Source of the DNA: Haliotis rubra
Lineage: Eukaryota
Assembly: GCF_003918875.1 (NCBI RefSeq)
Contig: NW_025767492.1
Span: forward strand, 1-64,000
DNA: 64,000 bases
Direction: 5' to 3'
Part shown: positions 21,812 through 60,504 of the stretch, piece after piece
How positions within the stretch are numbered: the stretch's first letter is position 1
Layout of the letters: each line of letters opens with the position of its first letter
Position numbers and translations under genes: made by a program
Notes under the pieces: generated by a model
Seen by the model: the letters and a program-made list of their open reading frames with translations, nothing else
Told to the model about the DNA's origin: nothing
Database searches by the model: none

Positions 21812-23349
21812 ATGAAGGAACGGAGGATTTGTTGTTATTTGGTCGGCTATATCGAATGGCTTTTCAGTGACTATTATCCTACAGCAGAGAATATCACCAG
21901 GTACGTAATGCATTGTTATTTAGTCAATGAATGTGTGATTCAAGACTAATCTTATGGATAACAACTTCTTGATTTATTTTTCACAACGTTTCTGGGCTAG
22001 TTCTTGCCCCTTGTTCAGGTGGATCCACCTGAAAATAAATCAAGAAGTTGTTATCCATAAGATTTGTCTTGTATTACTACACCAACTTCTAAATGCCTTT
22101 GAAGAATTTGATTGTGTGATTGTTCATGTAAAATGTCAATATATCTGAACGCCCGACTGTCTGTCTCTCTCTCTGTTCATCTTGTCTTCCTACCCACCCT
22201 GCAATATAAAATTGAACGTTACATGTAACTACAATAACATAAAAAGCTTTATTTAAACATCAGAATATAGGATTATATCATATGTTTCACTGATATACCG
22301 AGGATCGGAATTTGGATCAGAGTATCTTATCACAGTCAAGTCACCGGGACACATATTTATATCCGGGTTCTACAAAAACCAACACCAGCATCACCTATTG
22401 TAACACCATCAGTACACGTGTATCCTTGATTAATCCTTTTCCGGCTATCTGCGTACAGAACATTATCCTATAGCTTAAGCAGGTCATATTTTCTGTATGT
22501 TGCATTATTTGATCAGCAATCTCGACCAATAGACATAGCAACGTTATCTCCCTTGTACCACAGATGTTGAAGGAGATTGATGACTTCAACGAGGAGACTC
22601 AAAAGAAGGATATTACAGATGAAATGCCCGATCGTGGTGTAAGTTGAGTGTAGAATACAACGGAGAATTAACCTGCCCCTGTACAGTTATGATTCGCTTG
22701 AGTGTTACAATATGTTCAATATATACATATGTATAATTCTTAAAGGTGACATTGTAGTGGACATACATGAGATGAGAATCTCGACCTCTTTTAAAGGAAT
22801 AAGACAACATAATTCTAACAATCAGAAAAGGAAAATAGTAGCCCTAAGGATTGTGAATGAGTGAAACCTGATTGGTTCATATTTACCTGCAGATAGCATT
22901 ACACATGCACAGTTTCGTATGGTTGTTTTCATTTGTTTCAAAACTGCACCATACGAATTTAATATGTACTGTGTTGAATATTCCATTTCCCTTATTTTTA
23001 CTTCAGTACATTTACTTCTCTCAAAATGAACATTTGTTTTTGTTTCAGAGGGGACGACTGGGCCAGTCATCTGACAGAAGAACAACGGATGGCTCCTGTG
23101 ACAACGAAGTCTGTGTTGCTGGTGTCGGGGTGCCTGGGCGAAAGTTGGGAGACGGTCGGACTCCGACTAGGACTGTCCTATGTTTGTGTACAGAGGTGTA
23201 AGGTGCCTCACTGTATGCTGGACAAGTGGAGGATGAAGGAGGGTGGGAAGGCTACAGTGGACGTGCTGGTGAATGTCCTCCAGGAGAGTGTGTATGCCTG
23301 TACAGTGGACATGTTTACTGTAGTCAGGTGTTTTAAACACACTGCCTAA
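21812..23349 (+). pseudogene. Death-domain gene family A copy 1 (exons 21812-21900, 22564-22638, 23049-23349); frameshifted unless exon 2 is skipped
   Basis: Exon 1 is 89 nt (paralogs 90) and the start of exon 3 lacks 14 nt relative to copy 2. Canonical GT/AG sites; the DD frame is open. Confidence 0.65.
21941..22071. mobile_element. Small foldback/MITE insertion in intron 1 of A1
   Basis: About 40-bp inverted repeat CAAGACTAATCTTATGGATAACAACTTCTTGATTTATTTT / AAAATAAATCAAGAAGTTGTTATCCATAAGATTTGTCTTG, absent from paralogous introns. Confidence 0.7.
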
Positions 23350-23601
23350 TATTCACAACGTATATCACCGGTAGGCTCGGCAAAATGAGGATTATATTTC
23401 TTCAAAACTATTGACTGTGTTGCATTTGAATCTAGAAATAACACAAAAGTCTGTTACGTCTGAGATTACTATTACTGGTCATCTCCTTTTATCAATTTCC
23501 TGCGCCTAACTAATTTGGTTCCACGGAAAAACATATATGATCAGTTTAATGATTACTCTTGGTGATGATTTGTCACTACTATTTAGAAACAAAGACTAGA
23601 G

Positions 23602-23940
23602 GTGAGGTGGAATTGGGTTTTACGTCGTGCTTGAGAATATTTCGCTCATATGACGACGTGCATGTGTATGTGTATGTGCGGCTGCTTGTACTAGCCCAGA
23701 CTTAAGCTGGTTTTATAGTGCTAGCCCACTGAGATACCATGCCGCAGTGAAGCATGAATACCCACCCCACTCAGACCCCGAGCCGACCAGTCCTTGTTGT
23801 ACCCATTAATGCCGAGCGCCAGGCAGGGACCAACAAGTACCATATTTTAACGTCTTTTTGGTATGACGCGGTCGTGGATCGAACCCGCGACCTTCCGATC
23901 TCCGGGCGGATGCTTTAACCACTACACCACGGAGGCGGAC
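23602..23940 (-). mobile_element. Full-length tRNA-derived SINE
   Basis: tRNA head GTGGTGTAGTGG..GGTTCGATCC. 13-bp TSD ACAAAGACTAGAG (23589-23601, 23941-23953). Empty site in the paralog at about 49948. Confidence 0.9.
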
Positions 23941-24679
23941 ACAAAGACTAGAGATAAAGACTTTTCTGAATTGAAAAATAATAATGTGATAAGAGTTTAA
24001 TCACTGTAAATTAACATGCCTAACACGGAATAAAAAAGTCCTTTCATAAATGTACATTGAGCATTTTGGAGTTGATGTAGTGTTAGCATGTACCGTGTGT
24101 GCAGTTCGTTTGCTTTTTCACAAGGATGTTGTTTCAATGTCACTGCCAACCAAAGATACGTATAAGTATTCCACCATTGAGCTTACGTCTTGAAACAAAT
24201 CGCAATATTGTGGAGAAGGAACATTTCTATATTTGTTTCTTGTCCAAAAATCCTGGAAATGTGAGTTTCGTATTGATATAAATAATTTGAACCATATCAT
24301 CCACCCGTGAAGATCGGGTTAAAACTGGCTTCACTGTCTGGTCCACAATCGATCATTTACAGACCACTGTCATTTAGGTGGCATAGTTCTCAGTGCAGTG
24401 TAAATAACAAAGTAGCGTCTAGTTTAGATCCGATATTTGTAGCGGATCCGAAGAATCAATGTAATATTTGGGCATGCATGTATGCACGTTACATCAGTCA
24501 TCTTTGTTGAAGGCATTTCGTGGTTAGTGAAATGATCAATACACTTAATGATAAATGAATCATTTGAACGTTCCTGAAACAAATTTAAACATTCACTTTC
24601 AAATTGAGTCAAGGCGTTAAACGTATCAATTATTCCACACAGCAACAGATGAGGTCAGATGTGTCAAAATAGCTCAAAC

Positions 24680-25013
24680 CCGGAAGTATTTCCCTTTTTA
24701 TTTTTTAAAAAAACTAGAAACGGACCACACCTTGCTTGTAAAGTTGAAGCATGTATCGTAGATTATAGTCTTCTTATCATAAAAACATTAATGTTGGGTA
24801 TGTTTCAAATTGGGCGAAATCACAATCAAGTGCAAAATTTCTATCAACAGTGATACAAACAGTTTACATGTATGAAGATGCAAAATATTTATTTGAACTA
24901 TTTCAAATTCATATTTGTTTTTCAAGAGTGGTCAGGTTAGATGCTGAGACATTTTATTGACCAAGCACTCTTTCCCAATGATAGACAGGGTTAGAATGAC
25001 GTATCTATAAATA
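24680..25013 (+). promoter_or_regulatory. Candidate family-B promoter (ETS-like CCGGAAGT, TGACGT, TATA box)
   Basis: CCGGAAGT at 24680 and TATAAATA at 25006. Both are conserved in B2 (44292, 44608); the TATA is mutated in B3 (about 50942). Confidence 0.4.
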
Positions 25014-25127
25014 GTAACACGTCAAAACTATTTCAAGTAAATCCGAAAATTGTGATCCGTTACGTTACCACAACCTGTATCGACTGCATGGGACATGCAT
25101 AACGTAACGAGCTGCCATTGAGCCCAG

Positions 25128-25758
25128 ATGTCCTATGTCTTCAGGGGAGAACTGACTGAACATGTTCCGTCGGAGATTATTTGTACAGAGGATTTTTTAA
25201 GAGACGATTATCTTTTTCTCTTCAGGGGGATTTTCTGCTGCTATGGACAGTTTGAATTTCAGGTAGGACAAACATATATGTTTATGTATTTGTTGTATTA
25301 AGATATAATTGTTATTGTGATGTTGGTCGATTTATTACATTAAGTCATTAATCGTCACAAACATCTGTACCATCATGGCATTTTCTACAAAAAGAGCGGT
25401 ACTATTATATTTATGTTTGCAGCCATTATCCAGCGATGGTGGCTCAACAATACCTCTGACTGACGCTATTCAGGACTCCTGTCTCTCGGAGCAGCTTCTA
25501 CTGCGTGTAGCTGAGCATATTGGGGAGGGATTTGAAGCAGTGGGCATAAGACTGGGCCTACCCAAGGCGTTCATAGACAGATGTAAGATGTCACACTTCT
25601 CGCATCACATGCAGGTGTTTCACATGATGTACACGTGGAGGCAGTTAGCTGGGACACAAGCTACGGTTAGGGTTCTGATGGATGTTCTGGCAGACTCTGT
25701 TCACGTGTGTGATGTTGATGTGGACGCCGTTGTATTGCTGTTGAAGACAATGGAGTAA
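25128..25758 (+). CDS. Death-domain gene family B copy 1 (exon 1 ending 25262, exon 2 25423-25758)
   Basis: Donor CAG|GTAGGA and acceptor TTGCAG|CCA. Exon 1 ends IFCCYGQFEFQ. It is open from ATG 25128; the ATG homologous to B2 (25162) is out of frame because of two homopolymer insertions. Confidence 0.65.
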
Positions 25759-26258: not shown

Positions 26259-26381
26259 ACACTGAAGATACGCCTGCTAACACTGAAGATACGCCTGCTA
26301 ACACTGGAGATACGCCTGCTAACACTGGAGATACGCCTGCTAACACTGGAGATACGCCTGCTAACACTGGAGATACGCCTG
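26259..26381. repeat. 21-bp minisatellite x6
   Basis: Unit ACACTGGAGATACGCCTGCTA; x4 at about 52220, x1 at about 35433 and about 45873. Confidence 0.9.
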
Positions 26382-29252: not shown

Positions 29253-30600
29253 ATGAAGGAACGGAACAACTGTTGTTTATTTTGTCGGCTATGTAGGATG
29301 ACTTTTCAGTGGCTAATATGCTGTAGCCAAGCATGTCACCAGGTACGTTGTTGACATACTTATTCAGTCAATGATTGCGTGAAGTGTAATTTGTATGTAC
29401 GTAAATGTAACAAAATGCCCCAATGTCTCTGTTTATTTTGTCTTACTATCCACTCTGAACTATTAATTGATCGTTACACGTAACTACAATAACATAGTAA
29501 GCTTTATGTAACATCAGAATGGAGGATTCTATCATATTTTGTACACACAGAGTCTTCGCTGTTTTACCTCGGATCCGAATATCTTCACGAAGTACACGTC
29601 ACAGGGACACATTTTTAAATCCGGGTTCAGTGAAAAAAAATACCAGCATCACCTATTGTAACACCATCATAACACGTGTATACTTGATCAATCGTTTCCC
29701 CTTATCTGCGTATCGAGCATTTCCAATGCAGGTCATATTGTGCACATCTCGCATCATTTGTATTATGATCAGCAATCTTTACCAAGGTACATAGACATAA
29801 TTACCTCCCTTGCACCACAGGTTCTGAAGGCGACTGATGAGTTGGAAGAGGAGACTACAAGGAAGGACATAACAGATGAAATGCCCTATCGTGGTGTAAG
29901 TTTAGTGTAGAATACAGCACAGAATGTTCCTACCCCATGTACAATTATAATTCTACTGATTGTTATATGTTTAACATGTACATAAGTTTCATTGTAGTGG
30001 ACATACATAGGACATAAACCTTCATCTTTGATAGGAATTATAAGACAACATAACAACTCCAACAATCAGCCAAAGGAAAATAACAGCCCTGAGTGTTATG
30101 AATGACTTAAACGTGATATGTTCACATTTACAATCAGTTGTCACAATCAAACAGTTTCGTATAGTTATTCGCATCTGTTTCAAAACTGCATCATACGAAC
30201 TTAATATGTGCTGAACATTTCATTGCCCTTAATTTTACTTCAAAGCACATTTTCCTTTCTCAAAATGAACATATCATTGTTTCAGGACAAGTGTTCAAGA
30301 GAGGACGACTGGGCCAGTCATCTGACAGAAAAACAACGGATGGCTCCTGTGACGGAGAGAGTTGTGTTGCTGGTGTCGGAGTGCCTGGGTGAAGGTTGGG
30401 AGACGGTCGGACTCCGACTGGGACTGTCCTATGCTTGTGTACAGAGGTGTAAGCTGCCTCACTGTATGCTGGAAAAGTGGAGGATGAAGGAGAGTGGGAA
30501 GGCTACAGTGGACGTGCTGGTGAATGTCCTCCAGGAGAGTGTGTATACCTGTACAGTGGACATGTTTGCTGTAGTCAAATGTTTTCAACACACTACTTAA
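29253..30600 (+). CDS. Death-domain protein family A copy 2, 159 aa (exons 29253-29342, 29821-29895, 30286-30600)
   Basis: MKERNNCCLFCRLCRMTFQWLICCSQACHQ|VLKATDELEEETTRKDITDEMPYRG|DKCSREDDW...LGEGWETVGLRLGLSYACVQRCK..MLEKW..GKAT. All introns are phase 0 with GT/AG sites. Confidence 0.8.
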
Positions 30601-32640: not shown

Positions 32641-33450
32641 TCAGTGCTCCTTTAACACGGCGACGACATCCCACATGTCTGTATTGCACACCTGTAGACT
32701 CTGCTGGAGGATAACCATCAGATTCCCGGCTGTAGCCTCCTGACCTTCCTTCCTCCTCCGCGTGTTCAACATGGCAAAGATCTGCAGCACACAGGTAGAG
32801 TGAGTCATCTTGCACCTCTGTACACACACATAAGTCAGCCCTAGACGGACGCCAACCGCCTCCCAACCTTCCCCTAGGTTCTCCGACACAAGCAGCAATG
32901 TCTTTTCTGTCAGGTATACGTTCTTCTCTTCCTCCGACAACTGATTCCGCCAGTCTGTATTTGAAGGGACAGGCTAGAATATACAGTAAAAGTTCTGATA
33001 AAGTATGATCAACCCAATGTTGCATGTAATTCAGCATTACTACATGAGAAATTTGTATACCTGCTCGGCAAGTGTTACCATAATCAAACAGTAGTGTACA
33101 TAACCATAAACAGTGACACTGTTAATGTGAATGCCTCATTCAATTTACGTTTGATTGTCTTTAAGGTCCTAGGTCCTCGGGTTTTAGGTCCTCCTCGGCA
33201 AGTGCTACCATAATCAAACAGTAGTTGACAAAACCATATACAGTGACACTGTTAATGTGAATCTCTCATTCAATTTACCAATTTACCACTTGGCCAAGTC
33301 TTCAGTTGTGTTTGGTGTGTTTACAGTGTACTTTTATGAATAACCACACCAAATATACATACATTAAGTTGTTAGATTAATTAATAAAGCCAATTATCCT
33401 ACCTTGTAAATTCTTCTGAAACAACAGCAAATAGCCCCCTTCGTTTGCAT
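32641..33450 (-). CDS. Death-domain protein family C copy 1, 126 aa (exons 33450-33403, 32973-32641)
   Basis: MQTKGAICCCFRRIYK|PVPSNTDWRNQLSEEEKNVYLTEKTLLLVSENLGEGWEAVGVRLGL.. with donor AAG|GTAGGA and acceptor TTCTAG|. The conserved helix-4 Trp is replaced by Arg. Confidence 0.75.
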
Positions 33451-35210: not shown

Positions 35211-35699
35211 AAACGCCCGTGTAAGATATATTTTTTAGAGAATTGTGTCAGGTCAACATTTTACGATACCGGCCATAAGAAGAGACCAGAAAACACTCTA
35301 CGTTTTTAGAAACGTTGTTGTTCCTCCATCAAAAGATTGTGATCCTTTGTGTGTCCCTGTCAGTGTCTATCTGTATCTAGCTTGTGCAGCTGTGTCATGG
35401 GCATCTCCCTGCTGCTGAAGCTGAAATATTACACACTGGAGATACGCCTGCTAACTGTTGACCTCTCGTTGTGTATTACAGTTAATCACTGTAATGACGA
35501 TCCGAACATTCTGACAATATGTCAGTGACAGGTTTTATGCTCGTCATCGATAAATCAGTCATGGTCACGACTGGGGACATAAGGGATCAGCTCTAAACAG
35601 TGTCCCTAGTTGAGGTCATAGCTGCATTATGTGTACGTAACCTTTAAGCGCACAGAGCATTTATTAGTGAATGATGCGCTATATAAATGCCATTATTAT

Positions 35700-38600
35700 G
35701 TTTTACAGATTAAAGATAGTATGCAGCAGAGAGGGTTCGGGTGATCCTGGCACAGTCAGGCTGGTAAGGCTCATCATCAGCTCAGGGCCCTTGCCCCCTC
35801 TACACGCAGCCCAGACAGCGAATGGGACTTCTCCCAGGAAACACTGCCTAGTCGAACCCACCAAGAACTTTCCGGAGAATATGAAGGCTCCCCAACACTG
35901 CAGCCTTCTGCATTACCCAGAGTGTCAGAAGGGCTGTGCTCCCGGTGGAGAACCCGGGAACTCTCCGGATCTGCGCCAAGAGATCAGGAGGTACCAAACC
36001 AAGGGCACCAAGAACAATGGGGAGCCTGACGACGGTGTACTTTGGGTGCAAGCGAGACATTTCAAAGGCGAGGTCTGCATATTTATCATGCTTTTCCTGA
36101 ATCTTGCCAATCACATTGGTGTCAAAAGGGACAGAAAACTCAATGATATATATAAATTCATTGGCTTTATCAAAAAGGACAAGATCAGGTTTGTTGGCTG
36201 GAATTCTTCTGAGGCTGTATATGGGCCTATTCCACAGAAGTTTGAAAGCATCATTTTCCATGACACCCTGGACATGTTCAGGGTCGTACCACGGATGGAC
36301 CTCGGAGTCAAAGCCACAGGCATGTCAGAGACGGTAGTAAAAGCAACGAGCCATGCCATCATGTCGTTTAAGATATGCTGTTTGTGCCAAGGAAGGGCAT
36401 CCACTGACAAGGTGTTGGACAGTCTCTGTGAATTCATTGCAAAGTCGACATTTCATGTTGATATTTTCTTTAAGAATCACATTTAGGCGATTGCGAGTGG
36501 GAAGTGACTGCTCCTGAGCAGCAAAAAAGAAGCCCTCAGTTTCACATTTAAGACCAGCCGACTTCATCCAGGCGAAAGAGTCGGTGGGATTTCTATTCTG
36601 TTCAACACACTGCATGTACACACGATGCAATGGTTTCTCAGAAAGCTTCTCCACAAAAGACCGACTCTGGGCAGACTTGGTGAAGGACTTCACCTGGTTT
36701 ACTCCCATCACTGTACCGTCCAGCAGTACATCGCCATCAACAAAATCAACCTCAAATCTCAGATTCTGTCCAACAACCTTGGCACGCTTAAAATAGCTCT
36801 GGAATTCCTTGCTTTCATCATGAGTCTTCACATGCATCACCAGAGGATCATCCGATAAATAAATATGTGCAAGAGTACACAATAAAATTCTATCATGAAG
36901 AGCCTCCACATTAATCAAACCCCGACCTCCAGAATTGATTGGCATGTATAAACGGTTAAGAGAGGAACGAGGGTGGTGGGCTCTATTATCAGACATGATC
37001 CTTCTGGTCAGACGGTCAAGACTCTGGATGTCTTGTTTTGTCCAATCAACTACTCCAAAGGAATAAGAAAGGACTGGCACAGCAAAAGTATTGGTGGCCT
37101 TGACCTTGTTTCGATCATTTAGCTCTGAGCTCCAGATTTTCTTTAAACGAGATTTGTACTCAGCCCGAAGTTTGTCTTGAATCTGGGCATTCTGGAGCTT
37201 ATCTCGACCTTGCATTCCAAGATAGGTGTAGGCCTGATCTTCCACAAGATGCTCAATAACTCCTCCCCCTTGTAACTTGACCGATCCGTCATTAGTTACC
37301 TTGCCCTCGTTTCAAATGAAGAGTATTACATTTGTCGAGTCCAAATGTCATGCCAATAATCATTAGAAAAGGACTCGACAAGGAGAACCTGCTCTTTCAA
37401 ATTGGAATCTCCTTTGGCAAGGAGCTCGATGTCATCCATGTAAAGGAGATGAGTAAGCGGTGTTAGGGATCTGTGCTGAGGAGGTCCGGGATGGTAACCC
37501 TCCTCTTTATTGAGCAGAAAGGTCAAAGGATTTAAAGACAGACAAAAAAGCAAAGGACTAAAGGAATCCCCCTGAAATATCCCCCTTCTGATTGGAATAG
37601 ATTCCGAAGTCTGCACCTGCCCTTGCGAGTACATCTCAAGTTGAGTCGACCAGCAACTCATTAAAGACTTGAGTAAATCAAGTAGTCGCTCAGGGACGTC
37701 AATACAATGAAGAGACTTTAGAATCCATTCGTGAGGGACAGAGTCGTATGCTTTTTTGTAGTCAATCCAGCACATGGAGAGGTTGCGGTGATATGTTTTA
37801 GCCTCTTCCAAAATCATTTTCTGTACAAGAAGTTGATCCTTGCACCCCCAACATCCCTTTCTTGCTCCCTTCTGCTCTCTGTAAATTATATCATTTAAAG
37901 AGCAGTAAGATGACACGAGGTTTGTCAAACACCCTGTGAATATTTTGTATTGTGTATTCAAACATGTGATAGGGCGGAAGTTTTTGGGATCAGTCAAGTC
38001 TCCTTTCTTGGGGAGAAGTATTGTGCGACCTTTGCAGAACCATGGAGGAACATCACCTGTGTCCACAAGAGTACTGAAACAGTGTAGTAATGGTGTTTGG
38101 ACACAGGGGAACAGTTTCCAATAACGGTTTCGAATGCCATCAGGCCCTGGAGCTGTATTATATTTGAACTTTTTTATAACACTTTTCAGGCAAACTGGTG
38201 AGATGTAACAGACAAACGACCTAGTTACTTTCTCATGCATTGCATGGCCATAATCACGGACCCATGGTGCTTCCAGGTTACAGTTGCCGGGTATAGACCA
38301 CAACTGTTTCCAGAACCTTTCATTGGCATCCATGGGAGGCCGTTTGTCATGTTCACCATCACCCTTTGTTTTCAGTTGCCTGTAGAAGTGCTTTTCATTG
38401 TTTCTAAAAAGTTTATTTTGTTTGATGAATTTATTTTTCTTTTCCCATTTTTTCTTTCTTTCAGTCCAAACCTTTATTCTTGCCTTCAGGGAATCGACAA
38501 TTTGGAGAAGTATCTTTTCTTTCGTTGTTTTGAATTTCAGTTTTAATTTTCTCCAAATTGCCTTTTGTCGTTTAGACATTGGATTCCCTGATGATCTTAA

Positions 38601-39564
38601 CTTCAGGCAAAGCTCTATCCAGGAAATGTATTTTCTAGTTTCTGTTAGTTTCACTTGAAACCGGTTTTTCTTTGGTGTATTGTTCTTAGTATTGGCTGTG
38701 TTTTCTTTGGAAACTGTGAAGTTCCTCCAAGGTTCGAGCGGCAGCATAGACACAACAATTAACTTCATGTAATGAACAGTCCGATGAAAGTTTCATAGAA
38801 ATAATGTCATTTAATAAATTAATTTCATTTTTGGGAAAAGATTCTGTTATTTGTTTAATTGGCCTCCGTTTTTCTAAAGGTAAATCAGATATTTCGTCAT
38901 AAATAGAATGAAACAAAATATACACAGGATGTTCGGAAAGATCTGCAACTGAGGAAGAAGAAGAGTGAGGATCCAAAATTTCGGGACCAACTGGCTCCGT
39001 GCCGGAAGAGTTTCCATCAGGAAGAGGAGAGAGGTTAACATGGACGTCCATCAGAAGTTTTGGGTCTGCTGCCACTTGAGCATTCTGCTCATGCAAAGGT
39101 TCCTGACGGGCACCAGTTATGGGCTGAACTGGCTCACGGGGCATGAGATTTTAAGCCGCCGGAATTGATCTCGGAGATTTTGCTCCGTCAGGAAAGCATA
39201 CATGGGCATGGCATTGTCCCAATGCAGCTTAAGCGACTTGCCGTTTATTCGTGGATTTGCAGGCCATCCTGTCGCTCTTGCACACTCTAGTAGTGTGGTT
39301 TTCAGATGGTTTGACCAAGATATTCTTGATCGGGTGCTGTGCCTTCCCCTGGGGCAAGTCCCATCTCCAGTAAGGTTGGTTTGACTACCGGAGGAAGGCT
39401 GACCGGGCTGCGGAGTTGAATGATGATATTCTCCTTGGCTTTCGGTAACCCAGTGTAAAACCAGCTTCGGGGGGGTCAGCCCTAGCTGGGTGATGTACGT
39501 TTAGTTCAGGGAATAAAATTCCCCTATCTAGGCCCACCACGGAGAGGCGTACATCATCAGGCCC
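35700..39564 (-). mobile_element. Full-length RLE-type non-LTR retrotransposon (R4/Dong-like), frameshifted
   Basis: RT (PGPDG, IDYKKAYDSV, GIFQGDSFSP, YMDD), CCHC finger (CRLC..ETVQHLVSGC) and restriction-like endonuclease (KPDLV..IIEFSVPFD). TSD CCATTATTAT at 35690-35699 and 39565-39574. Empty site at about 46130. Confidence 0.92.
39491..39564 (-). ncRNA. HDV-like self-cleaving ribozyme at the retrotransposon 5' end
   Basis: Folds by eye as P1 GGGCCU/GGGCCU (G1-U wobble), P2 UGAUGUAC/GUACAUCA, P3 GCC/GGU, L3 UCUCCGU, P1.1 CU/AG, a P4 hairpin and J4/2 ACUAA. G1 equals the TSD-defined element end. Confidence 0.75.
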
Positions 39565-41650: not shown

Positions 41651-42112
41651 GGTGCTGTGGTACAAAACAACCTTAGCGCTAAGACTACCGTATTAAGTCA
41701 ATGTTAAGGTATAGAGTTAAGGTCACCTTAGCGCTAAGACTACCGTATTAAGTCAATGTTAAGGTATAGAGTTAAGGTCACCTTAGCGCTAAGACTACCG
41801 TATTAAGTCAATGTTAAGGTATGGGAGTTAAGGTCACCTTAGCGCTAAGACTACCGTATTAAGTCAATGTTAAGGTATGTTAGTTAAGGTCACCTTAGCG
41901 CTAAGACTACCGTATTAAGTCAATGTTAAGCTATGGGAGTTAAGGTCACCTTAGCGCTAAGATCAATTTATACAACGGCACTCTGGGGCTCCTTTCACGA
42001 AGCAACCTTTATTAAGGTTAACCTAACACCCATTCTTTAACACTGCACTATGATCACCTTAGTGACTTACGTTCAGCTGAAGTACATGTAGTGCTTTGAA
42101 AAAGGAGGCCCA
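41651..42112. mobile_element. Two adjacent Harbinger-like MITEs, the first with an expanded 55-56-bp internal tandem repeat (x5)
   Basis: TIR pairs GGTGCTGTGGTACAAAA / TTTATACAACGGCACT and GGGCTCCTTTC / AAAGGAGGCCC with CTG junctions. The unit contains the palindrome CTTAGCGCTAAG. Paralog 48313-48551 has one unit; empty site at about 28937. Confidence 0.7.
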
Positions 42113-42398: not shown

Positions 42399-43594
42399 AT
42401 GAAGGAAGGGAACAACTTTTGTTCATCTGGTAGGCTATTTAGGATGGCTTTTCAGTGGCTAATATGCTATAGCCAAGAATATCACCAGGTACGTTATGCA
42501 TTGTTGACCTCTTCATTCAGATATTGTGTAAAGTGTATTTATATGTGTAAATGTGTATCTTCAGTCTCAGTCCAACTTAACTGCACTGTTAATGGTCGCT
42601 ACAACTACAATAACGTATAACGTACATAAGCTTTATGTAAACATCTCAATGTAGGATTATATCATATTTTTTACATACAGAGTCTTCACTATTTTACCTC
42701 GGATCCGGTTCATGCAGGTAGCCAAAGTAGTGTAAGTCCCCATGGTCCCTAGCATGGTGATCAGCCTTCAGTTGCTGGCGAAATATAGCTAATTTTTACG
42801 TTGTATTGTCCAAAAATAGTTCTCTACTTTTAAAGATATATGCTAGCTAGTTTTAACTCATTTTGTGATAATCTAGTAATTTTACTGTCCTTCGTTGACA
42901 GGGTTTTATATATTATATGTATGTATTATGAATTTAGAACTAGTTTTAGTCACGATATGGCTGAAATATTGCCAATGTGGCTTTAAATTTTAACTCACTC
43001 ACTCACTCACCTCGGATCCGAATATCTTCACACAGTCACTTCACGGGTCACATTTACATCCGGGTTCAACAAAAACCAACACCAGCATCACCTATTGTAA
43101 CACCATCATTACACGTGTACACTTGATGAATTCTTTTCTAATTATCTGCATATAGCTGTTCGCATTTCTTTTAAAACTGCATCATACGAACTTAGTGAAT
43201 ACTGTACAGAATATTCCATTGCCCTTTCTTTTACTTCAAAGTGCATTTACCTTTCTCAAAAAAAAAGATATCATTGTTTCAGGACAAGTGTTCAAGGGAC
43301 AAATGGACCAGTCATCTGACAGAAGAACAACGGATGGCTCCTGTGACAAAGAAGTCTGTGTTGCTGGTGTCGGAGTGCCTGGGCGAAGGTTGGGACACGG
43401 TCGGACTCCGACTGGGACTGTCCTATGCTTGTGTACAGAGGTGTAAGCTGCCTCGCTGTATGCTGGACAAGTGGAGGATGAAGGAGGGTTTGAAGGCTAC
43501 AGTGGACTTGCTGGTGAATGTGCTCCATGAGAGTTTGTATGCCTGTACAGTGGACATGTTTGCTGTAGTCAAATATTTTAAACACTCTGTTTGA
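42399..43594 (+). CDS. Death-domain protein family A copy 3, 133 aa (exons 42399-42488, 43283-43594)
   Basis: MKEGNNFCSSGRLFRMAFQWLICYSQEYHQ|DKCSRDKW... The acidic exon 2 is genomically deleted and the frame is preserved. Confidence 0.75.
42708..43008 (+). mobile_element. 5'-truncated (ACTC)n-tailed retroposon in the A3 intron
   Basis: 12-bp TSD ACCTCGGATCCG (42696-42707, 43009-43020). Empty site in the paralog at about 49135. Confidence 0.85.
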
Positions 43595-44763
43595 TGTTCA
43601 CAGCATACATCACCGGTAGGCGCTGCCAAAAAGAGGATAACATTTCTTCAAACCATTCACTGTGTTGCATTTGAATCTATAAAGTCCGTCATGTCTGAGA
43701 TTACTATTACTGGTCATATCCTTTCATCAATGTCCTGCGGCTAACTAATTTGGATTCATGGAAAAACATATATGATCAGTTTAATGATAACTCTTGGTGA
43801 TGATTTCTTACTACGGTTTAGAAAAAAAGATAAAGACTTCTCTGAATTGAAAAACTCTAATGTGATAAGAGTTAATCACTGTAAATTGACAAGCCTAACA
43901 TGGAATAAAACAAGTCATTTCATAAATGTACATTGAGCATTTTGGAGTACATGTAGTATTAGCATGTATTGTGTGTGCAGTTGGTTTCTTTTTCACAATG
44001 ATGTTGTTTCAATGTCACTGCTAACCAAAGATACGTATATTTATGTAGCGGATCAGAAGTATCAATGTAATATTTGGGCACGCATGTATGCACGTTACGT
44101 CATTCATCTTTGTAGAGGTCATGTCGTGGTTAGTGAAATTATCAATGCACTTAATGATACATGAATCATTTGAACGTTCCTGAAACAAATGTATTTCTAA
44201 ACATTCACTTTCAACTTGAGTCAAGGCGTTTAACGTAACAATTAATCCACACAACAACAGATGAGGTCAGGTGTGTCAAAATAGCTCAAACCCGGAAGTA
44301 TTTCCCTTTTTATTTAAGAAAACACACTAGAAACGGCCCACACTTTGCTTGTAAAGGGAAGCATGTATCGTAGATTATTGTCTTCTTATCATAAAAAACA
44401 TTCATGTTGGGTATGTTTAAAATTGGGCGAAATCACAATGAAAGTTTCTATCAGTAGTGATACAAACTGTTTACATACATTAAGATGCAAAATATTTATT
44501 TCTACTATTTCAAATTCAATGTTTCAAAAGTGGTCAGGTTAGTTACGAAGACATTTGATTGACCAAACACTCTTTCCCAATCATAGACAGGGTTAGAATG
44601 ACGTATCTATAAATAGTAACACGTCACAACTATTTCAAGTAAATCCGAAAATTGTGATCCGTAACGTTACCACAACCACTATCGCCTGCATGGGACATGT
44701 ATAACGTAACGAGCTGCCATTGAGCCCAGATGGTCTATTTCTTCAGGGCAGGACTGACTGAAC

Positions 44764-45355
44764 ATGATCCGTCGGAGATATTTTATGCAGAGAGATTTTA
44801 AGAGACGGTTTTCTTTATTGCTGCAGAGGATTTTCTGCTGCTATGAACAGTTTGAATTTCAGGTAGGACAAACATATATGTTTATGTATTTGTTGTATTA
44901 AGCTATAATTGTTATGGTTTTATTGCTCGATGTATTACATAGAAGCATTGCGCTTCAAAAACACCGAAACCATCATGATATTTCTAGCAAAATTGGTGCT
45001 ATCATATTTATATTTACAGCCATTATCCAGTGATGGTGGGTCAACAGTGCCTCTGCCTGCTGTTATTCAGAACTCTTGTGTCTCCGAGCAGACTCCACAG
45101 TGTGTAGCTGGGCATATTGGGGAGGGATTTGAAGCAGTGGCCATAAGACTGGGCCTACCAAAGGTGTTCATAGACAGGTGTAAGATGTCTCACTCCTCGC
45201 ATCACATGCAGGTGTTTCACATGATGTACACGTGGAGGCAGATAACTGGGACACAAGCTACGGTCAGGGTTCTGATGGATGTTCTGGCAGACTCTGTACA
45301 CGTGTGTGATGTTGATGTGGACGCCGTTGTAAGGCTGTTGAAGACAATGGAGTAA
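44764..45355 (+). CDS. Death-domain protein family B copy 2, 144 aa (exons 44764-44862, 45020-45355)
   Basis: MIRRRYFMQRDFKRRFSLLLQRIFCCYEQFEFQ|PLSSDGG..IGEGFEAVAIRLGLPKVFIDRCKMSH..QVFHMMYTWRQ..GTQAT, joined by a phase-0 GT/AG intron. Confidence 0.78.
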
Positions 45356-48835: not shown

Positions 48836-49868
48836 ATGAAGGAACGGAACATCTGTTGTTCATTTGGTCGGCTATTTAGGATGGCTTTTCAGTGGCTACT
48901 ATGCTGTAGCCAAGAATATCACCAGGTACGTTATGCAATGTTGACATTTTTATTCAGATATTGTGTAAAGTGTATTTATATGTGTAAATGTGTGTCTATC
49001 AGTCTCAGGCCAACTTAACTGCACTGTTAATGGTCGTTTCAACTACAATAACGTATAACGTACATAAGCATTATTTAAACATCTGAATGTAGGATTATAT
49101 CATATTTTTTACATACAGAGTCTTCACTATTTTACCTCGGATCCGAATATCTTCACACAGTCACTTCACGGATTACATTTACATCCGGATTCAACAAAAA
49201 CCAACACCAGCATCACCTATTGTAACACCATCATTACACGTGTACACTTGATGAATTCTTTTCTAATTATCTGCGTATAGTTGTTCGCATTTGTTTCAAA
49301 ACTGCATCATACGAATTTAATGAATTCTGTACTGAATATTCCATTGTCCTTTCTTTTACTTCAAAGTGCATTTACCTTTCTCAAAAAAAACATATCATTG
49401 TTTCAGGACAAGTGTTCAAGGGACGACTGGACCAGTCATCTGACAGAAGAACAACGGATGGCTCCTGTGACAAAGAAGTCTGTGTTGCTGATGTCGGAGT
49501 GCCTGGGCGAAGGTTGGGAGATGGTCGGACTCCGACTAGGACTGTCCTATGCTTGTGTACAGAGGTGTAAGCTGCCTCACTGTATGCTGGACAAGTGGAG
49601 GATGAAGGAGGGTGTGAAGGCTACAGTTGGCGTGCTGGTGAATGTGCTCCAGGAGAGTGTGTATGCCTGTACAGTGGACATGTTTGCTGTAGTCAAATGT
49701 TTTCAACACTCTGTTTCATGTTCACAACATACATCACCGGTAGGCGCTGCCAAAATGAGGATCACATTTCTTCAAACCATTCACTGTGTTGCATTTGAAT
49801 CTATAAAGTCCGTTACGTCTGAGATTACTATTACTGGTCATCTCCTTTTATCAATTTCCTGCGGCTAA
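48836..49868 (+). CDS. Death-domain protein family A copy 4, 183 aa (exons 48836-48925, 49407-49868), C-terminal read-through
   Basis: MKERNICCSFGRLFRMAFQWLLCCSQEYHQ|DKCSRDDW... Exon 2 is deleted, and the stop TGA of copy 3 is TCA here. Confidence 0.72.
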
Positions 49869-51097: not shown

Positions 51098-51702
51098 ATG
51101 TTCCGTCAGAGATTTTTTATACAGAGAGTTTTTGAGAGACGATTTTTTTTTCTCTTCAGAGGATTTTCTGCTGCTATGGACAGTTTGAATATCAGGTGGG
51201 GCCTTTAGGAAAAAAACATATATGTTTATGTATTTATTGTATTAAGTTACAATTGTTATTGTGATGTTGGTCGATTTATTACATTGAGTCATTGTACGTC
51301 ACAAACATCTATACCATCATGGCATTTTCTACAAAAAGAGCGGTACTATTATATCTATGTTTGCAGCCACTATCCAGCGATGGTGGGTCAACAATACCTC
51401 TGACTGACGCTATTCAGGACTCCTGTCTCCCAGAGCAGCTTCTACTGCGTGTAGCTGAGCATATTGGGGAGGGATTTGAAGCATTTGGCATAAGACTGGG
51501 CCTACCCAAGGCGTTCATAGACAGGTGTAAGATGTCTCACTCCTCGCATCACATGCAGGTGTTTCACATGATGTACACGTGGAGGCAGTTAGCTGGGACA
51601 CAAGCTACGGTCAAGGTTCTGATGGATGTTCTGGCAGACTCTGTACACGTGTGTGATGTTGATGTGGACGCCGTTGCAAGGCTGTTGAAGACAATGGAGT
51701 AA
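51098..51702 (+). CDS. Death-domain gene family B copy 3 (exons 51098-51195, 51367-51702); exon 1 is 1 nt short in a T9 run
   Basis: DD exon is intact and near-identical to B1. Exon 1 is 98 nt vs 99 in B2 and the donor is altered to GTGGGG. Could be a pseudogene or a homopolymer assembly error. Confidence 0.6.
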
Positions 51703-52219: not shown

Positions 52220-52302
52220 ACACTGGAGATACGCCTGCTAACACTGGAGATACGCCTGCTAACACTGGAGATACGCCTGCTAACACTGAAGATACGCCTG
52301 CT
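52220..52302. repeat. 21-bp minisatellite x4
   Basis: Paralog of 26259-26381. Confidence 0.88.
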
Positions 52303-53853: not shown

Positions 53854-55179
53854 TATAGGAAATTATACTTCATATGTATTGTCATATGGTATGACACACA
53901 GACATCAACTGAACATCTAATAGTGCATTAAAAACCACTAAACATATACTACAATATATAGACTCAAAGCAGTCGAGTCAGTTATAAGCACGATCCGACA
54001 AATAAGTTGACAGGAGATAACATTATCACAAGGGACATAGAACCCTCCAGCTTATAGCTGTCTCCAATAGCAACTGTGACTATTGTCATGGATAGATATG
54101 ATTCATATAGGTTTTACATATTTTCTGTTAATGAATGTGCATTACACAGTTTCAGCTTGGAAGTCACATTTAAAAGCTTTAGTCCTGTCTGAAGAAACAT
54201 CCAGTTTAAATGTTATCAATTGTAAGTGTTGGGGTATTTCTATTTTGCTTTGTAGGGTAATTTTGTGTGTGTGTCCGTGCGTGCGTGTGTGTGGTGTTTG
54301 GTTCTGGTTTGGTATGTTTTGTTTTTTTTTTTGTTTGTTTGTTTTACTTGTTTCATAAAAGTGTGTGATTGGGGTATGGGTGTCACGTGACGTTATGGGG
54401 AAGTTCAAGAACCCCATCAGAATTGGAATTAACTGAAATGGTCACTGACACAAGTCATCATGACATTACATGCTGACCAAATAATATAGTAGATGGAAGA
54501 GATCCACTCACTTCGCGAAACCAAATCAGCTGTAATAGCAAGTTCATGTACTTCACTTCCAAAATATGGTGCTGGGATGAGATAACATCCTGCTGATCCT
54601 AGTTCATATCACTGTCATGAACCATCCGTGTTATCACAGCAGATATTTACAGATTGGCTGTGATTAGCTGGCGGATCCGAAGAATATTTTAGCCCTGGGT
54701 TTATGTATATGCAATTTAAAGACCCGTCTAAGCACCATCAATCAGTTGGGAAATCCGACAAATATGGGGCTTGAATTTACATGTACTTATTGACCTGAGT
54801 GTATATAACCGCCAATCTGTCCAGCACAATAAGTACCTGAAAAACCTTTCATTGATGCGGCAGTTTTTATAAATGTCCATCAAATTTGTATCCATATTTT
54901 CAAAACACCTATCCATATTTTAAAAACACTCGACTTAATAAAAGTCCTCTTCAAAGAGGTTTTCATGTATGCACGTCAACTGGTGGATCCGAAGAATGAT
55001 TCAACCAATGAGAGCTGTCGAGTTATTCATATGCATTTCACAGACCCCAGTCGGCGCATGTCCACTGAGACACCAACACTGGACAGCTACGTCGCTCTCT
55101 CAGTTGACTCAGTGGTCTTACTTACACAGGGAGGTAGAAGGAACGGAACAACTGTTGTTCATTTGGTCGGCTATGTAGG

Positions 55180-56773
55180 ATGGCTTTTCAGTGGCTAATA
55201 TGCTGTAGCCAAGCATGTCACCAGGTACGTTGTTGACATACTTATACAGTCAATGATTGCGTGAAGTGTAATTTGTATGTACGTAAATGTAAGAAAACGT
55301 CCCAATGTCTCTGTTCATTTTGTCTTACTATCCACCTTGAACTATTAATTGATCGTTACACGTAACTACAATAACATAGTAAGCTTTATGTAAACATCAG
55401 AATTGAGGATTCTATCATATTTTGTACATACAGAGTATTCCCTGTTTTACCTCGGATCCGAATATCTTCACACAATCACGTCACGGGGACACATATTTTA
55501 ATCCCCGTTCTACAAAAAACAAATACCATAATTTGTTTAAACGCAAATGTGTCTCTCCCCGAAAATCTAAATGTGTCTAAACGCCCCACTGTCTCTGTGT
55601 CTGTTCATCTTGTGTCTCTGTCCATTCTGAACTATTAACTGATTGTTATACTTAACTACAATGACATTAAAGCTTTATGTATACATCAGAATGTAGGATA
55701 ATATCCCATGTTTTACATACAGAGTTTTTACTGACATACCGAGGATCCGAATATCTTCACGAAGTACACGTCACAGGGACACATATTTAAATCCGGGTTC
55801 AGTGAAAACAAATACCAGCATCACCTATTGTAACACCATCATAACACGTGTATGCTTGATCAATCTTTTTTCCCCTTATCTGCGTATCGAGCATTGTCAA
55901 TGCAGGTCATATTGTGCACATCTCGCATCATTTTATGATCTTATTGTATTATGATCAGCAAATCTTTACCAAGAGACATAGACATAATTACCTCCCTTGC
56001 ATCACAGGTTTTGAAGGCGACTGATGAGTTGGATGAGGAGATTACAAGGAAGGACATAACAGATGTAATGCCGGATCGTCGTGTAAGTTGAGTGTAGAAT
56101 ACAGCACAGAATGTTCCTACCCATGTACAATTACATTTCTACTGATTGTTATATGTTTAACATGTACTTATGTTTCAATGTGGTGGACATACATGGGACA
56201 AAAACCTTCATCTTTAATAGGAATTATAAGACAACATAACAACTCCAACAATCAGCAAAAGGAAAATAACAGCCCTGAGTGTTATGAATGACTTAAACGT
56301 GATATGTTCATACAATCAGTTGTCACAATTACACAGTTTCGTATAGTTATTCGCATTTGTTTCAAAACTGCATCATACGAACTTAATATGTGCTGAACAT
56401 TTCATTGCCCTTACTTTTACTTCAAAGCACATTTTCCTTTCTCAAAATGAACATATCATTGTTTCAGTGTTCAAGAGAGGACTGGGCCAGTCATCTGACA
56501 GAAGAACAACGGATGGCTCCTGTGACAGAGAGAGTTGTGTTGCTGGTGTCGGAGTGCCTGGGTGAAGGTTGGGAGACGGTCGGACTCCGACTGGGACTGT
56601 CCTATGCTTGTGTACAGAGGTGTAAACTGCCTCGCTGTATGCTGGACAAGTGGAGGATGAAGGAGGGTGGGAAGGCTACAGCGGACGTGCTGGTGAATGT
56701 CCTCCAGGAGAGTGTGTATACCTGTACAGTGGACATGTTTGCTGTTGTCAGGTGTTTTCAACACACTGCCTAA
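55180..56773 (+). CDS. Death-domain gene family A copy 5 (exons ending 55224, 56008-56082, 56468-56773); original start lost
   Basis: The ATG is replaced by TAG at 55135. An in-frame ATG at 55180 gives MAFQWLICCSQACHQ|VLKATDELDEE..|CSREDW.. (141 aa). Confidence 0.65.
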
Positions 56774-58584: not shown

Positions 58585-59490
58585 ATTCTAAGATGCTTAG
58601 CGCTTAGAACAATCGAACAAAAAATACATTATCAGACAATAAAGGTATAGTTTTTTGATGACGTAACAATTGAATGACGTTATCCCGTCACTGCGCTATT
58701 CTAGTGTGCCCCCTCGTAATCGAACCATTTTACATTACGTCACAATGTAAGCGACGTCACGATGCATGTCAGTTGTCATCGCCTCGTACAACCTCATACA
58801 GTAAACTACTGCGTTGCATCCCGTTTTTGGTTTGCAGTTGCTTCACTCACCTAACATCACTGGTGGAAACATCACGTTTATGTTTTCTGACGTTTTAAAT
58901 GTCTCAATTCGACTCGTAAGTTTTCAGCGACACGGTAACGTTCGCAATGTTTACATTCCACAATGCAATCGTGGAATGTCGCTAGACTACTCAGCTTCGT
59001 CTGGATGTACTGATCTAAACATACGTTGGTAGTAGAAATGCGACGTTCACATGGTTTACGTTAATCACAGATGTAATTAAAATCCTTTATAGAAGATATT
59101 TAATCCGAACGTAAACCGTCATGAAACTGTTTATCATTTGTTTTTCTGGTAACGTTCGTCTTAACGTAGGGGGGCAGACACATCAATAGAACAGCGCGCC
59201 CGTTAGCCCTGTGCGAGGATTCTTAATTTAGGTCACCGACACCGTCGTTTGTTTTCTGCCTTAAATTAATCGTAATTATCCTTAGAAAGAGTTAAATTTG
59301 CCATCTTAGAAAAGAAATACAGTTCACTCTACCACCATGTATAGTGTAATAAAACACACTTTCTCCCTGAACTATTATGACGTTAAAGCACTCGGACGCA
59401 AGCGTCCTCGTGCTTTAACTATAATAGTTCAGGGCAAAAGTGTGTTGTATTACTATACATGGAGGTAGAAACGAACTATGACTTTCTTAA
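58585..59490. mobile_element. About 900-bp non-coding insertion ending in an about 180-bp imperfect palindrome
   Basis: Absent from the paralog at about 32460. Hairpin 59312-59488 is centred on GGACGCAAGCGTCC. Confidence 0.75.
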
Positions 59491-59671
59491 AGTATGAAAA
59501 TAATTGATGATACCAGGTGTTTCCTGTCCCACCCGATATAAATATATGCAAAGCGTAGTCAAATTGGTAACCTGAAAATATTTCGGAACGTATGGTATAA
59601 GTCAAAATAGTGACTTCCATCGGACATCGTTGTTGTCACTGATACGTTGAGTTGAGGTGTGAGTTAGATCA

Positions 59672-60504
59672 TCAGTGCTCCTTCAACACGGCGACGACAC
59701 CCCACATGTCTATATTGCACACCTGTAGACTCTGCTGTAGGATCATCATCATATTCCCCGCTGTAGCCTCCTGACCTTCCTTCCTCCTCCACGTGTTCAA
59801 CATGGCAAAGATCTGCGTCACACAGGTAGAGTGAGTCATCTTGCACCTCTTTACACGCACATAAGTCAGCCCTAGACGGACGCCCACCGCCTCCCAACCT
59901 TCCCCTTGGTTCTCCGACACAAGCAGCAATGTCTTCTCTGTCAGGTGTTTTTCTCTTCCTCCGACAGCTGATTCCGCCAGTCTGTATTTGAAGGGACAGG
60001 CTAGAATATACAGAAAAGTTCTGATAGAGGTATGATCAACCCAATGTTGCATGTAATTCAGCATTACTACATGAGAAATTTTTATACCTGCTCGGCAAGT
60101 ACTACCATTATTAAATAGTAGTGGACAAAACCATATACAGTGACGCTGTTAATGTGAATCTCTCAATCAATTTACGTTTAATTGTTTTTTTATGTCCTGG
60201 GTCCTAGGTCCTCAGGGTTTAGGGACTGCTCGGCAAACACTACCATTACTAAATAGAAGTGGACAAAACCATATAAAGTGACACTGTCATTGTCAATATC
60301 TCATATAATGATTTCTTTCCGCTTTACTTCTTGTCTGGATACCGTGGCCAAATCTTCAGTTGTGTTTGGTGTGTTTAAAGTGTACTTTCATGAATAGCCA
60401 CGCCAAATATATATTCGTTAAGTGTTTAGATTAATTAATAAAGCCAATTATCCTATTTTGTAATTTCTTCTGAAACAACAGCAAATAGCCCCCATCGTTT
60501 GCAT
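59672..60504 (-). pseudogene. Death-domain gene family C copy 2 (exons 60504-60457, 60000-59672)
   Basis: Exon 1 reads MQTMGAICCCFRRNYK but the donor GT is changed to AT. A 4-nt deletion in exon 2 shifts the frame relative to C1. Confidence 0.75.

What the first reader, a model, noticed from the sequence alone, without database searches (positions are those of the whole stretch)
21812..60504. Hidden cluster of small, probably lipid-anchored death-domain-only genes in three families
Seen: ten copies share one architecture, a short N-terminal exon plus a terminal death-domain exon. The phase-0 acceptor falls in the same register in the three divergent families: the conserved (L/I)G is residue 33-34 of the exon in A3/A4, B and C1. 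That strongly supports the spliced models. Known: the pattern LGxxWExVGxxLGLSxxxVxRCK..Q...ML..W....G.xAT resembles PIDD1 and RAIDD/CRADD death domains, and death-fold-only proteins (COPs/POPs, viral decoys) act as signalling modulators. Inference: an expanded, lineage-specific set of membrane-tethered DD nucleators or decoys with no CARD, TIR, kinase or transmembrane domain. The cluster is evolving by birth and death.
Basis: partly seen in the sequence, partly recalled or inferred. Interest (0 to 1): 0.85.

Follow-up and report, generated by a model that had tools for sequence, protein, structure and literature searches.

The report
Abalone cluster of small death-domain genes
This stretch of blacklip abalone DNA holds ten tandem copies of small genes that encode only a CRADD-like death domain behind a short, cysteine-rich N-terminal exon. 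Four are already in RefSeq as uncharacterised proteins and several others are decaying, so it is a real lineage-specific family of probable cell-death or immune-signalling modulators whose function is untested.

Summary
The window is Haliotis rubra contig C2602, and it carries ten death-domain (DD) terminal exons in three families: A x5, B x3, C x2. All ten match Pfam Death, and each has a short upstream ATG exon.

The cluster is therefore not "hidden".

An AlphaFold model has a confident six-helix DD. Its best structural match is RAIDD/CRADD DD (Z 12, rmsd 1.6 A). No CARD, TIR, kinase or transmembrane domain is present.

Of the other six copies:
- C2 is clearly broken, and A1 is broken unless its middle exon is skipped.
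- B1 and B3 have exon-1 frameshifts in homopolymer runs, which could be assembly errors.
- A3 and A4 lack the middle exon and evolve without detectable constraint.

Against the H. rufescens orthologues, A2, A5 and all three B copies show purifying selection (dN/dS 0.2-0.3).

A di- or tri-cysteine cluster lies 6-7 residues before the exon-1 donor in five Haliotis subfamilies (A, B, C, D, F). This fits S-acylation, but nothing here tests it.

I could obtain no RNA evidence, and a CRADD-binding prediction gave no verdict. The scan has noted a similar cluster elsewhere in this genome.

Verdict: a real, partly annotated, lineage-specific DD-only family; a new variant of a known kind.

The parts
21812..23349 (+). 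A1, probably a pseudogene. Exons 21812-21900, 22564-22638, 23049-23349.
   Evidence: A 1-nt deletion in exon 1 (about 21836) shifts the frame into a stop in exon 2. A 14-nt deletion sits at the start of the DD exon. The ORF stays open only if exon 2 is skipped. The DD ORF is intact and hits Pfam Death at 8e-6. dN/dS against H. rufescens is 0.55, not significant.
25162..25758 (+). B1. Exon 1 at 25162-25262 is frameshifted; the DD exon is 25423-25758.
   Evidence: Two 1-nt insertions in T and G runs give a TAA at codon 13. They could be assembly errors, because a similar homopolymer difference was seen at 44393. The DD exon is intact (Pfam 2.5e-5), with dN/dS 0.25 against H. rufescens.
29253..30600 (+). 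A2, intact, 159 aa, identical to RefSeq LOC124260713. Exons 29253-29342, 29821-29895, 30286-30600.
   Evidence: The spliced translation is identical to P0001. Introns are GT-AG and phase 0. The AlphaFold DD has pLDDT above 90. dN/dS is 0.30, P=0.003.
32641..33450 (-). C1, intact, 126 aa, identical to RefSeq LOC124260715. Exons 33450-33403 and 32973-32641.
   Evidence: The spliced translation is identical to P0173. Exon 1 encodes MQTKGAICCCFRRIYK.
35600..39500 (-). Non-LTR retrotransposon that splits the cluster.
   Evidence: ORFs at 37326-38768 (RVT_1, 3e-23) and 36325-37245 (zf-RVT, 1.5e-7).
42399..43594 (+). A3, a two-exon copy (42399-42488, 43283-43594) giving a 133-aa ORF. No protein model was found for it.
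   Evidence: No exon-2 homologue was found. It is in frame, but the conserved CC is lost (ICYS). dN/dS is 0.87, not significant. A very high-copy repeat lies in its intron at 42655-43047.
44764..45355 (+). B2, intact, 144 aa, identical to RefSeq LOC124260714 isoform X2. Exons 44764-44862 and 45020-45355.
   Evidence: The spliced translation is identical to P0006. dN/dS is 0.28, P=5e-6.
48836..49868 (+). A4, a two-exon copy (48836-48925, 49407-49868) that has lost its stop codon, giving a 183-aa ORF.
   Evidence: dN/dS is 0.57, not significant.
51098..51702 (+). B3. Exon 1 at 51098-51195 is frameshifted; the DD exon is 51367-51702.
   Evidence: A 1-nt deletion in a T run at about 51143-51151 could be an assembly error. 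The DD exon is intact (Pfam 2.3e-6), with dN/dS 0.30.
55135..56773 (+). A5, 141 aa, identical to RefSeq LOC124260712. Exons 55180-55224 (from Met16), 56008-56082, 56468-56773.
   Evidence: The ancestral ATG at 55135 is now TAG, and RefSeq starts at the next Met. dN/dS is 0.20, P=0.0002.
59672..60504 (-). C2, a pseudogene. Exon 1 at 60504-60457; DD exon at 60000-59672.
   Evidence: The donor GT has become AT. A 4-nt deletion in the DD exon shifts the frame, and the conserved LG is now QG.

Best explanation
The region is a tandem, Haliotis-specific cluster of small genes of two or three exons. Each encodes a 126-159 aa protein with three parts: a short N-terminal exon carrying basic and hydrophobic residues and a di- or tri-cysteine cluster, a linker with an 'EDW' motif, and one CRADD-type death domain. 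Shown: domain identity and fold; exact agreement of four models with RefSeq; segmental duplication; decay of several copies; purifying selection on A2, A5 and the three B copies; and conservation of the Cys cluster at a fixed distance from the exon-1 donor in five subfamilies. Inferred: the Cys cluster is S-acylated and holds the DD at a membrane, where the protein takes part in homotypic DD assemblies as an adaptor, nucleator or competitor in apoptotic or innate-immune signalling. CRADD is one candidate partner, since it is reported as the only CARD-bearing caspase activator in molluscs. Whether the proteins activate or inhibit is unknown. Copy number changes by birth and death.
For: Pfam Death on all ten copies and as the only domain in the RefSeq proteins. 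AlphaFold model of LOC124260713: residues 62-159 have pLDDT above 90 and form six helices. Best structural match is RAIDD DD: Foldseek TM 0.78, VIA-align Z 12.0, rmsd 1.6 A. Best PDB sequence hits are CRADD, PIDD and RIPK1 DDs. Four spliced models are identical to RefSeq proteins. Orthologues exist in H. asinina, H. rufescens and H. cracherodii, and H. rufescens keeps a B-A-B order. dN/dS against H. rufescens is 0.20-0.30 for A2, A5 and B, with P from 0.003 to 1e-6. Families A, B, C, D and F form one clade apart from CRADD, with support 93/90. In exon 1 of A, B, C, D and F, and in two other species, only 6-7 residues separate the CC(C) cluster from the donor, with basic and hydrophobic neighbours. 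Molluscs are reported to lack APAF-1 and PIDD and to keep CRADD (PMC11463336). H. rubra has a canonical CARD-DD CRADD gene.
Against: No transcript evidence was obtainable. No listed run that holds the stretch is on record as RNA, and those laid behave as DNA. No transcriptome-derived protein turned up in the protein searches. S-acylation is inferred from a motif only. The N-terminal 60 residues are modelled at low confidence. Recent paralogue pairs have a pooled dN/dS of about 0.75, and up to six of the ten copies are damaged or unconstrained. The CRADD-DD with B2-DD complex prediction gave no verdict. Pfam scores sit close to the cut-off because the DDs are divergent, and family A lacks 8 residues at the start of helix 4.
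Confidence: 0.6

Rival explanations
1. The proteins are real DD-only proteins, but the Cys-rich N-terminus is not a lipid anchor. It might instead be a redox or metal-binding peptide, a degron, or a tolerated leader, and the proteins act as soluble cytosolic DD modulators in the manner of COP/POP proteins.
For: No acylation test was possible. The N-terminus is modelled as a low-confidence helix. A2 has a CCxxCxxC pattern. A5 (RefSeq) starts at Met16 and lacks the first Cys pair, and A3 has lost the CC.
Against: The only Cys feature kept across five subfamilies and three species is one CC(C) next to hydrophobic and basic residues at a fixed position. That is typical of S-acylation motifs (my own knowledge, for example GAP-43) and not of a metal site. 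A sister subfamily in other Haliotis species begins MGNYVSC, which looks like a myristoylation plus palmitoylation motif.
Confidence: 0.22
2. The array is mostly or wholly non-functional: duplicated relics of a DD gene carried along by segmental duplication, with the RefSeq models being predictions from open frames rather than expressed genes.
For: No RNA evidence was found. Four to six of the ten copies are damaged or unconstrained. The neighbourhood is dense in transposable elements. Pooled dN/dS for recent pairs is about 0.75.
Against: There is significant purifying selection against H. rufescens for A2, A5 and B. Exon 1, the splice sites and the CC motif are conserved across species. Independent annotations predict the same models in four species.
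Confidence: 0.12
3. The DD exons are alternative 3' exons of one or more larger multidomain genes.
For: DDs usually sit at the C-terminus of larger proteins, and multi-DD proteins are the best non-Haliotis hits.
Against: Every copy has its own ATG exon 160-950 nt upstream with a phase-0 donor and its own stop codon. C copies lie on the opposite strand. RefSeq models are small and separate. No other domain-coding exons lie between copies.
Confidence: 0.03

Closest known systems
CRADD/RAIDD death domain (PDB 2o71, 2of5)
   Same: It is the best sequence match (E 1e-9) and the best structural match (Z 12.0, rmsd 1.6 A, 27% identity). Both share the 'EDW' lead-in before helix 1. Both genes place an intron just upstream of the DD.
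   Different: There is no CARD. The small genes form their own clade apart from H. rubra CRADD. Their intron is phase 0 and 4-8 codons before the W, whereas the CRADD intron is phase 1 and 2 codons before it. Family A lacks 8 residues at the start of helix 4.
Death-fold-only regulators (CARD-only COPs, PYD-only POPs, viral decoys)
   Same: A single death-fold domain with no effector domain; lineage-specific and tandemly duplicated.
   Different: The fold class is DD, not CARD or PYD. They are not recent copies of the gene they might regulate. They carry a conserved Cys-rich N-terminal exon. No inhibitory activity has been shown.
Acylated sorting adaptors and N-terminally palmitoylated proteins (TRAM/TICAM2, GAP-43); comparison from my own knowledge
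   Same: A short N-terminal lipidation-type motif attached to a small homotypic-interaction domain. The motif is hydrophobic-CC(C)-basic in the window's families, and MGxxxSC in a sister subfamily.
   Different: TRAM has a TIR domain and is myristoylated. Acylation is unproven here. None of the window's proteins starts with Met-Gly.
Lineage-specific DD expansions in invertebrates (amphioxus, coral, starfish and oyster multi-DD or small DD proteins)
   Same: The best non-Haliotis profile hits are such proteins. The ESM Atlas holds clusters of DD-only proteins of about 100-120 aa in Cnidaria, Chordata and Mollusca.
   Different: Among the relatives whose sequences I read, the Cys-exon plus DD architecture and the A/B/C/D/F clade occur only in Haliotis.

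Membership tests
Death domain superfamily (Pfam PF00531) | Significant match to the Death HMM | tested here: met
   All ten exons score E 5e-7 to 1.4e-4. Eight are at or above the 22.6-bit cut-off and two are at 22.4-22.5. The RefSeq proteins score the same way.
Death domain superfamily (Pfam PF00531) | Six-helix antiparallel bundle | tested here: met
   The AlphaFold model has six helices at pLDDT above 90. The top 17 VIA-align matches are all DDs, led by RAIDD at Z 12.
CRADD/RAIDD | N-terminal CARD joined to the C-terminal DD | tested here: not met
   No CARD appears in any model. The true H. rubra CRADD, with CARD and DD exons, lies on contig C480.
CRADD/RAIDD | Orthology, meaning it groups with CRADD in a tree | tested here: not met
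   Families A, B, C, D and F form a separate clade (93/90), while H. rubra CRADD groups with H. asinina CRADD.
PIDD1 | LRR, ZU5 and UPA domains before the DD | tested here: not met
   Only Death was found. ZU5 loci lie on other contigs.
Death-fold-only regulators (COP/POP-like) | A single death-fold domain with no effector domain | tested here: met
Death-fold-only regulators (COP/POP-like) | Binds and modulates a death-fold signalling partner | tested here: inconclusive
   The CRADD-DD with B2-DD complex prediction gave no verdict. This needs experiments.
N-terminally S-acylated (palmitoylated) proteins | Cys cluster flanked by hydrophobic and basic residues near the N-terminus | tested here: met
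   The CC(C) cluster lies 6-7 residues before the exon-1 donor in A, B, C, D and F and in H. rufescens and H. asinina. It is lost in A3.
N-terminally S-acylated (palmitoylated) proteins | Thioester-linked fatty acid and membrane association | not testable with these tools
   Needs acyl-biotin exchange or click chemistry, and localisation studies.
N-myristoylated proteins | Met-Gly start with Ser/Thr at position 6 | tested here: not met
   A starts MK, B starts MI and C starts MQ. Only the sister subfamily E in H. cracherodii and H. rufescens starts MGNYVSC.

The most novel reading that the evidence does not exclude
These are S-acylated, membrane-tethered DD-only 'sorting adaptors'. In molluscs, which are reported to lack PIDD and APAF-1, they would supply the missing upstream DD platform that recruits CRADD and so activates CARD caspases at membranes. 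The alternative is that they tune that recruitment as competitors. Rapid birth and death of copies would be driven by pathogens.
Probability: 0.12. Interest if true: 0.8.

Novelty: new variant of a known kind. Interest (0 to 1): 0.45.

Why it matters
Death-fold assemblies drive apoptosis and innate immunity. Molluscs are reported to lack APAF-1 and PIDD yet keep CRADD (PMC11463336), so what engages the CRADD death domain in these animals is unknown. A conserved, expanding family of DD-only proteins with a CRADD-type DD and a probable membrane-anchor motif is a concrete candidate for that role, or for a decoy layer acting on it. Abalone also suffer severe viral and bacterial disease in aquaculture. 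The genes are already in RefSeq, but as 'uncharacterized' proteins. This report gives them an architecture, a family structure and testable hypotheses.

Tried and rejected
RNA evidence: two run searches found no listed holder on record as RNA. Runs X1 and X2 covered exons, introns and intergenic DNA alike with no splice joints, so they are DNA. X14 and X10 held only a high-copy repeat at 42655-43047. Expression is therefore untested, not refuted.

Complex prediction of H. rubra CRADD DD with B2 DD gave no verdict, with a score of 0.00. It is not evidence either way.

The first AlphaFold run used a 13-sequence alignment and gave pLDDT 60.6. It was superseded by the 70-sequence run.

The look-up of encoding contigs has no record for the window's own proteins.

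Literature searches for abalone DD, CRADD-like, DD-only or palmitoylated DD proteins found nothing on this family.

The Rfam scan of the window found nothing at gathering score.

Cluster look-ups of small non-Haliotis DD hits were mostly unnamed metagenome or Logan fragments.

Rejected readings: a recent CRADD-derived decoy (the tree separates the family from CRADD); DD exons of a larger gene; and a metal-binding CCxxCxxC motif, which is not conserved beyond A2.

No N runs occur in the window. An N gap in the H. rufescens locus L007 was left as it is.
Full report
**Identity of the window.** A protein search with the A2 terminal exon returned a 100% identical, 159-aa RefSeq protein of Haliotis rubra, the blacklip abalone (LOC124260713). 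The genome tool places the window at contig C2602:1-64000 of a 1.38-Gb assembly. The window contains no N.

- Ten ORFs with the LGxxWExVGxxLGL...RCK pattern lie at the reported places.
- All ten hit Pfam Death, at E 5e-7 to 1.4e-4.
- They fall into three families: A1-A5, B1-B3 on the plus strand and C1-C2 on the minus strand. Identity between families is about 35-50%. Family A has an in-frame 8-residue gap at the start of helix 4.
- Every copy has a homologous ATG exon upstream. A1, A2 and A5 also have a 75-nt acidic middle exon, which A3 and A4 lack.

**The cluster is not hidden.**

| Copy | RefSeq gene | Length |
|---|---|---|
| A2 | LOC124260713 | 159 aa |
| B2 | LOC124260714 isoform X2 | 144 aa |
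| C1 | LOC124260715 | 126 aa |
| A5 | LOC124260712 | 141 aa |

Relatives are annotated in H. asinina, H. rufescens and H. cracherodii, some as "death domain-containing protein CRADD-like".

**Fold and nearest relatives.**
- Death is the only Pfam domain in the full-length proteins.
- With a 70-sequence alignment, AlphaFold models LOC124260713 with residues 62-159 at pLDDT above 90 and six helices. The first 60 residues are at low confidence.
- Foldseek ranks RAIDD DD (2o71) first, with TM 0.78 and rmsd 1.6 A. VIA-align gives it Z 12.0 over 82 residues, followed by RIPK1, TRADD, FADD and ankyrin DDs.
- A profile search of PDB sequences ranks CRADD (1e-9), PIDD (9e-8) and RIPK1 (2e-6).
The proteins are still not CRADD orthologues. 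H. rubra has a canonical CARD-plus-DD CRADD gene on contig C480, and in a maximum-likelihood tree it sits apart from the small genes.

**Family structure beyond the window.**
- The genome holds at least 38-40 related DD exons in further tandem clusters on contigs C136, C1052, C2853, C72, C2430, C777, C238 and others.
- Families A, B and C, together with D (P0009, C136) and F (C1052 and others), form one clade with support 93/90.
- The orthologous H. rufescens locus carries B-A-B in the same orientation. The mixed A/B arrangement therefore predates the split of these two species.
- Outside Haliotis, the best hits are multi-DD or small DD proteins of amphioxus, coral, starfish and oyster. The ESM Atlas holds clusters of DD-only proteins of about 100-120 aa in several phyla.

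**Duplication and decay.** Three stretches are related by segmental duplication:
- 22.1-34.7 kb (A1-B1-A2-C1) matches 49.3-63.3 kb (A4-B3-A5-C2) at 87-90% identity.
- 43.0-45.9 kb (A3-B2) matches 49.1-52.2 kb at 90-93%.
- A non-LTR retrotransposon lies between them at about 35.6-39.5 kb.

State of the ten copies:

| Copy | State |
|---|---|
| A2, B2, C1 | Intact |
| A5 | First ATG changed to TAG; RefSeq starts at Met16 |
| A4 | Stop codon lost, giving a 183-aa ORF |
| A3, A4 | Two in-frame exons; A3 has also lost the conserved CC |
| A1 | 1-nt deletion in exon 1 and 14-nt deletion at the start of the DD exon; stop in exon 2 unless that exon is skipped |
| B1, B3 | Exon-1 frameshifts |
| C2 | Donor changed from GT to AT, a 4-nt deletion, and LG changed to QG |

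One caveat applies to A1, B1 and B3. Their single-base indels lie in homopolymer runs. Short-read contigs disagree with the assembly at just such a run (A6 at 44393). These three lesions therefore need read-level confirmation. The C2 lesions, and the 14-nt deletion in A1, are not of that kind.

**Selection.**
- Nei-Gojobori dN/dS between recent paralogues is noisy, ranging from 0.3 to 1.9, with a pooled value of 0.75.
- Against the H. rufescens orthologues it is 0.30 for A2 (P=0.003), 0.20 for A5 (P=0.0002) and 0.25-0.30 for B1-B3 (P<1e-4).
- It is 0.55-0.87 and not significant for A1, A3 and A4.
- Among the A and C copies, the ones RefSeq annotates are those with intact frames, and A2 and A5 also show constraint. 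All three B DD exons show constraint, although B1 and B3 have frameshifted first exons.

**The N-terminal exon.**
- Exon 1 ends in phase 0 in A, B, C, D and F.
- It carries a CC or CCC cluster with only 6-7 residues between it and the donor, next to hydrophobic and basic residues. Examples are WLICC-SQACHQ (A), RIFCC-YEQFEFQ (B), AICCC-FRRIYK (C), CGCC-FYRRYQ (D) and KKKLCCC-GWPGYQ (F).
- The motif is kept in H. rufescens and H. asinina.
- This fixed position across DDs that are only 35-50% identical argues that the exon is homologous and the cysteines matter.
- By analogy with N-terminal palmitoylation motifs such as GAP-43 (my own knowledge), S-acylation is the most likely role.
- A sister subfamily in other Haliotis species starts MGNYVSC, which looks like a dual-acylation motif.
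- None of this is a test. No transmembrane-length hydrophobic stretch is present.

**Mechanism.**
- Shown: small DD-only proteins of CRADD-type fold, conserved in the genus and evolving by birth and death.
- Inferred: membrane tethering through acylated cysteines, and participation in homotypic DD assemblies.
- A published survey reports that molluscs lack APAF-1 and PIDD and keep CRADD as the only CARD-bearing caspase activator (PMC11463336). CRADD's DD is therefore one candidate partner.
- A structure-based test of CRADD DD with B2 DD gave no verdict.
- Whether the proteins nucleate or compete cannot be told.

**Expression.**
- No listed run that holds the stretch is on record as RNA. The runs that could be laid are DNA, because they cover introns and intergenic sequence evenly and show no splice joints.
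- The only support for transcription is indirect: the RefSeq models, conservation of the splice sites, and purifying selection.

**Verdict.** The genes are known to RefSeq as uncharacterised proteins, but I found no paper describing this family. I rate it a new variant of a known kind, namely death-fold-only adaptors or regulators within an invertebrate DD expansion. Its distinguishing feature is the conserved Cys-rich N-terminal exon. Interest is moderate.

Noticed in passing
window 12104-12964 (-): Exons of an unrelated gene with an IgGFc-binding-protein N-terminal domain (PF17517, E 1.2e-12 for 12403-12717).
   Followed up: partly
window 18499-19218 (+); 20176-21366 (-); 288-929 and 3712-4134 (+): Transposon remains upstream of the cluster: a DDE_3 (Tc1/mariner-type) transposase ORF and several reverse-transcriptase or LINE fragments.
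   Followed up: partly
window 42655-43047 (also 17103-17404, inverted): A very high-copy repeat, with summed contig depth of 1e5 or more in the DNA runs, sits inside the intron of A3. It is the only part of the stretch held by the small runs X10 and X14.
   Followed up: no
window 26259-26381 and 52220-52302; 41670-41962: A 21-nt tandem repeat (5.9 and 4.0 copies) lies downstream of B1 and B3 and differs in copy number between the duplicated units. A 56-nt tandem repeat (5.3 copies) lies at 41670-41962.
   Followed up: no
window 44393: Short-read contigs lack one A of an A6 run that the assembly has. This is either an assembly homopolymer error or a polymorphism, and it bears on the single-base frameshifts in A1, B1 and B3.
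   Followed up: partly
An Rfam scan of the whole window at gathering score found no family.
   Followed up: partly
G000:C480:1056614-1057579 (L005, L006): The canonical H. rubra CRADD gene: a CARD exon and a DD exon separated by a phase-1 intron two codons before the 'DW' motif.
   Followed up: partly
G000:C238:111000-120999 (L004); G000:C1197: Further A-C units. C238 holds LOC124265383, an A copy with a C-terminal frameshift, next to an intact-looking C copy. These may be paralogues or haplotigs.
   Followed up: partly
G000:C136 (L002), C1052 (L001), C2430 (L003), C777, C2853, C72: Other tandem clusters of small DD genes. Subfamily D has CGCC in exon 1, and subfamily F has KKKLCCC. Subfamily E has several copies with in-frame stops.
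   Followed up: partly
L007:4225-4320 (H. rufescens): An assembly gap (N run) interrupts the first B copy of the orthologous H. rufescens locus. It was left unfilled.
   Followed up: no
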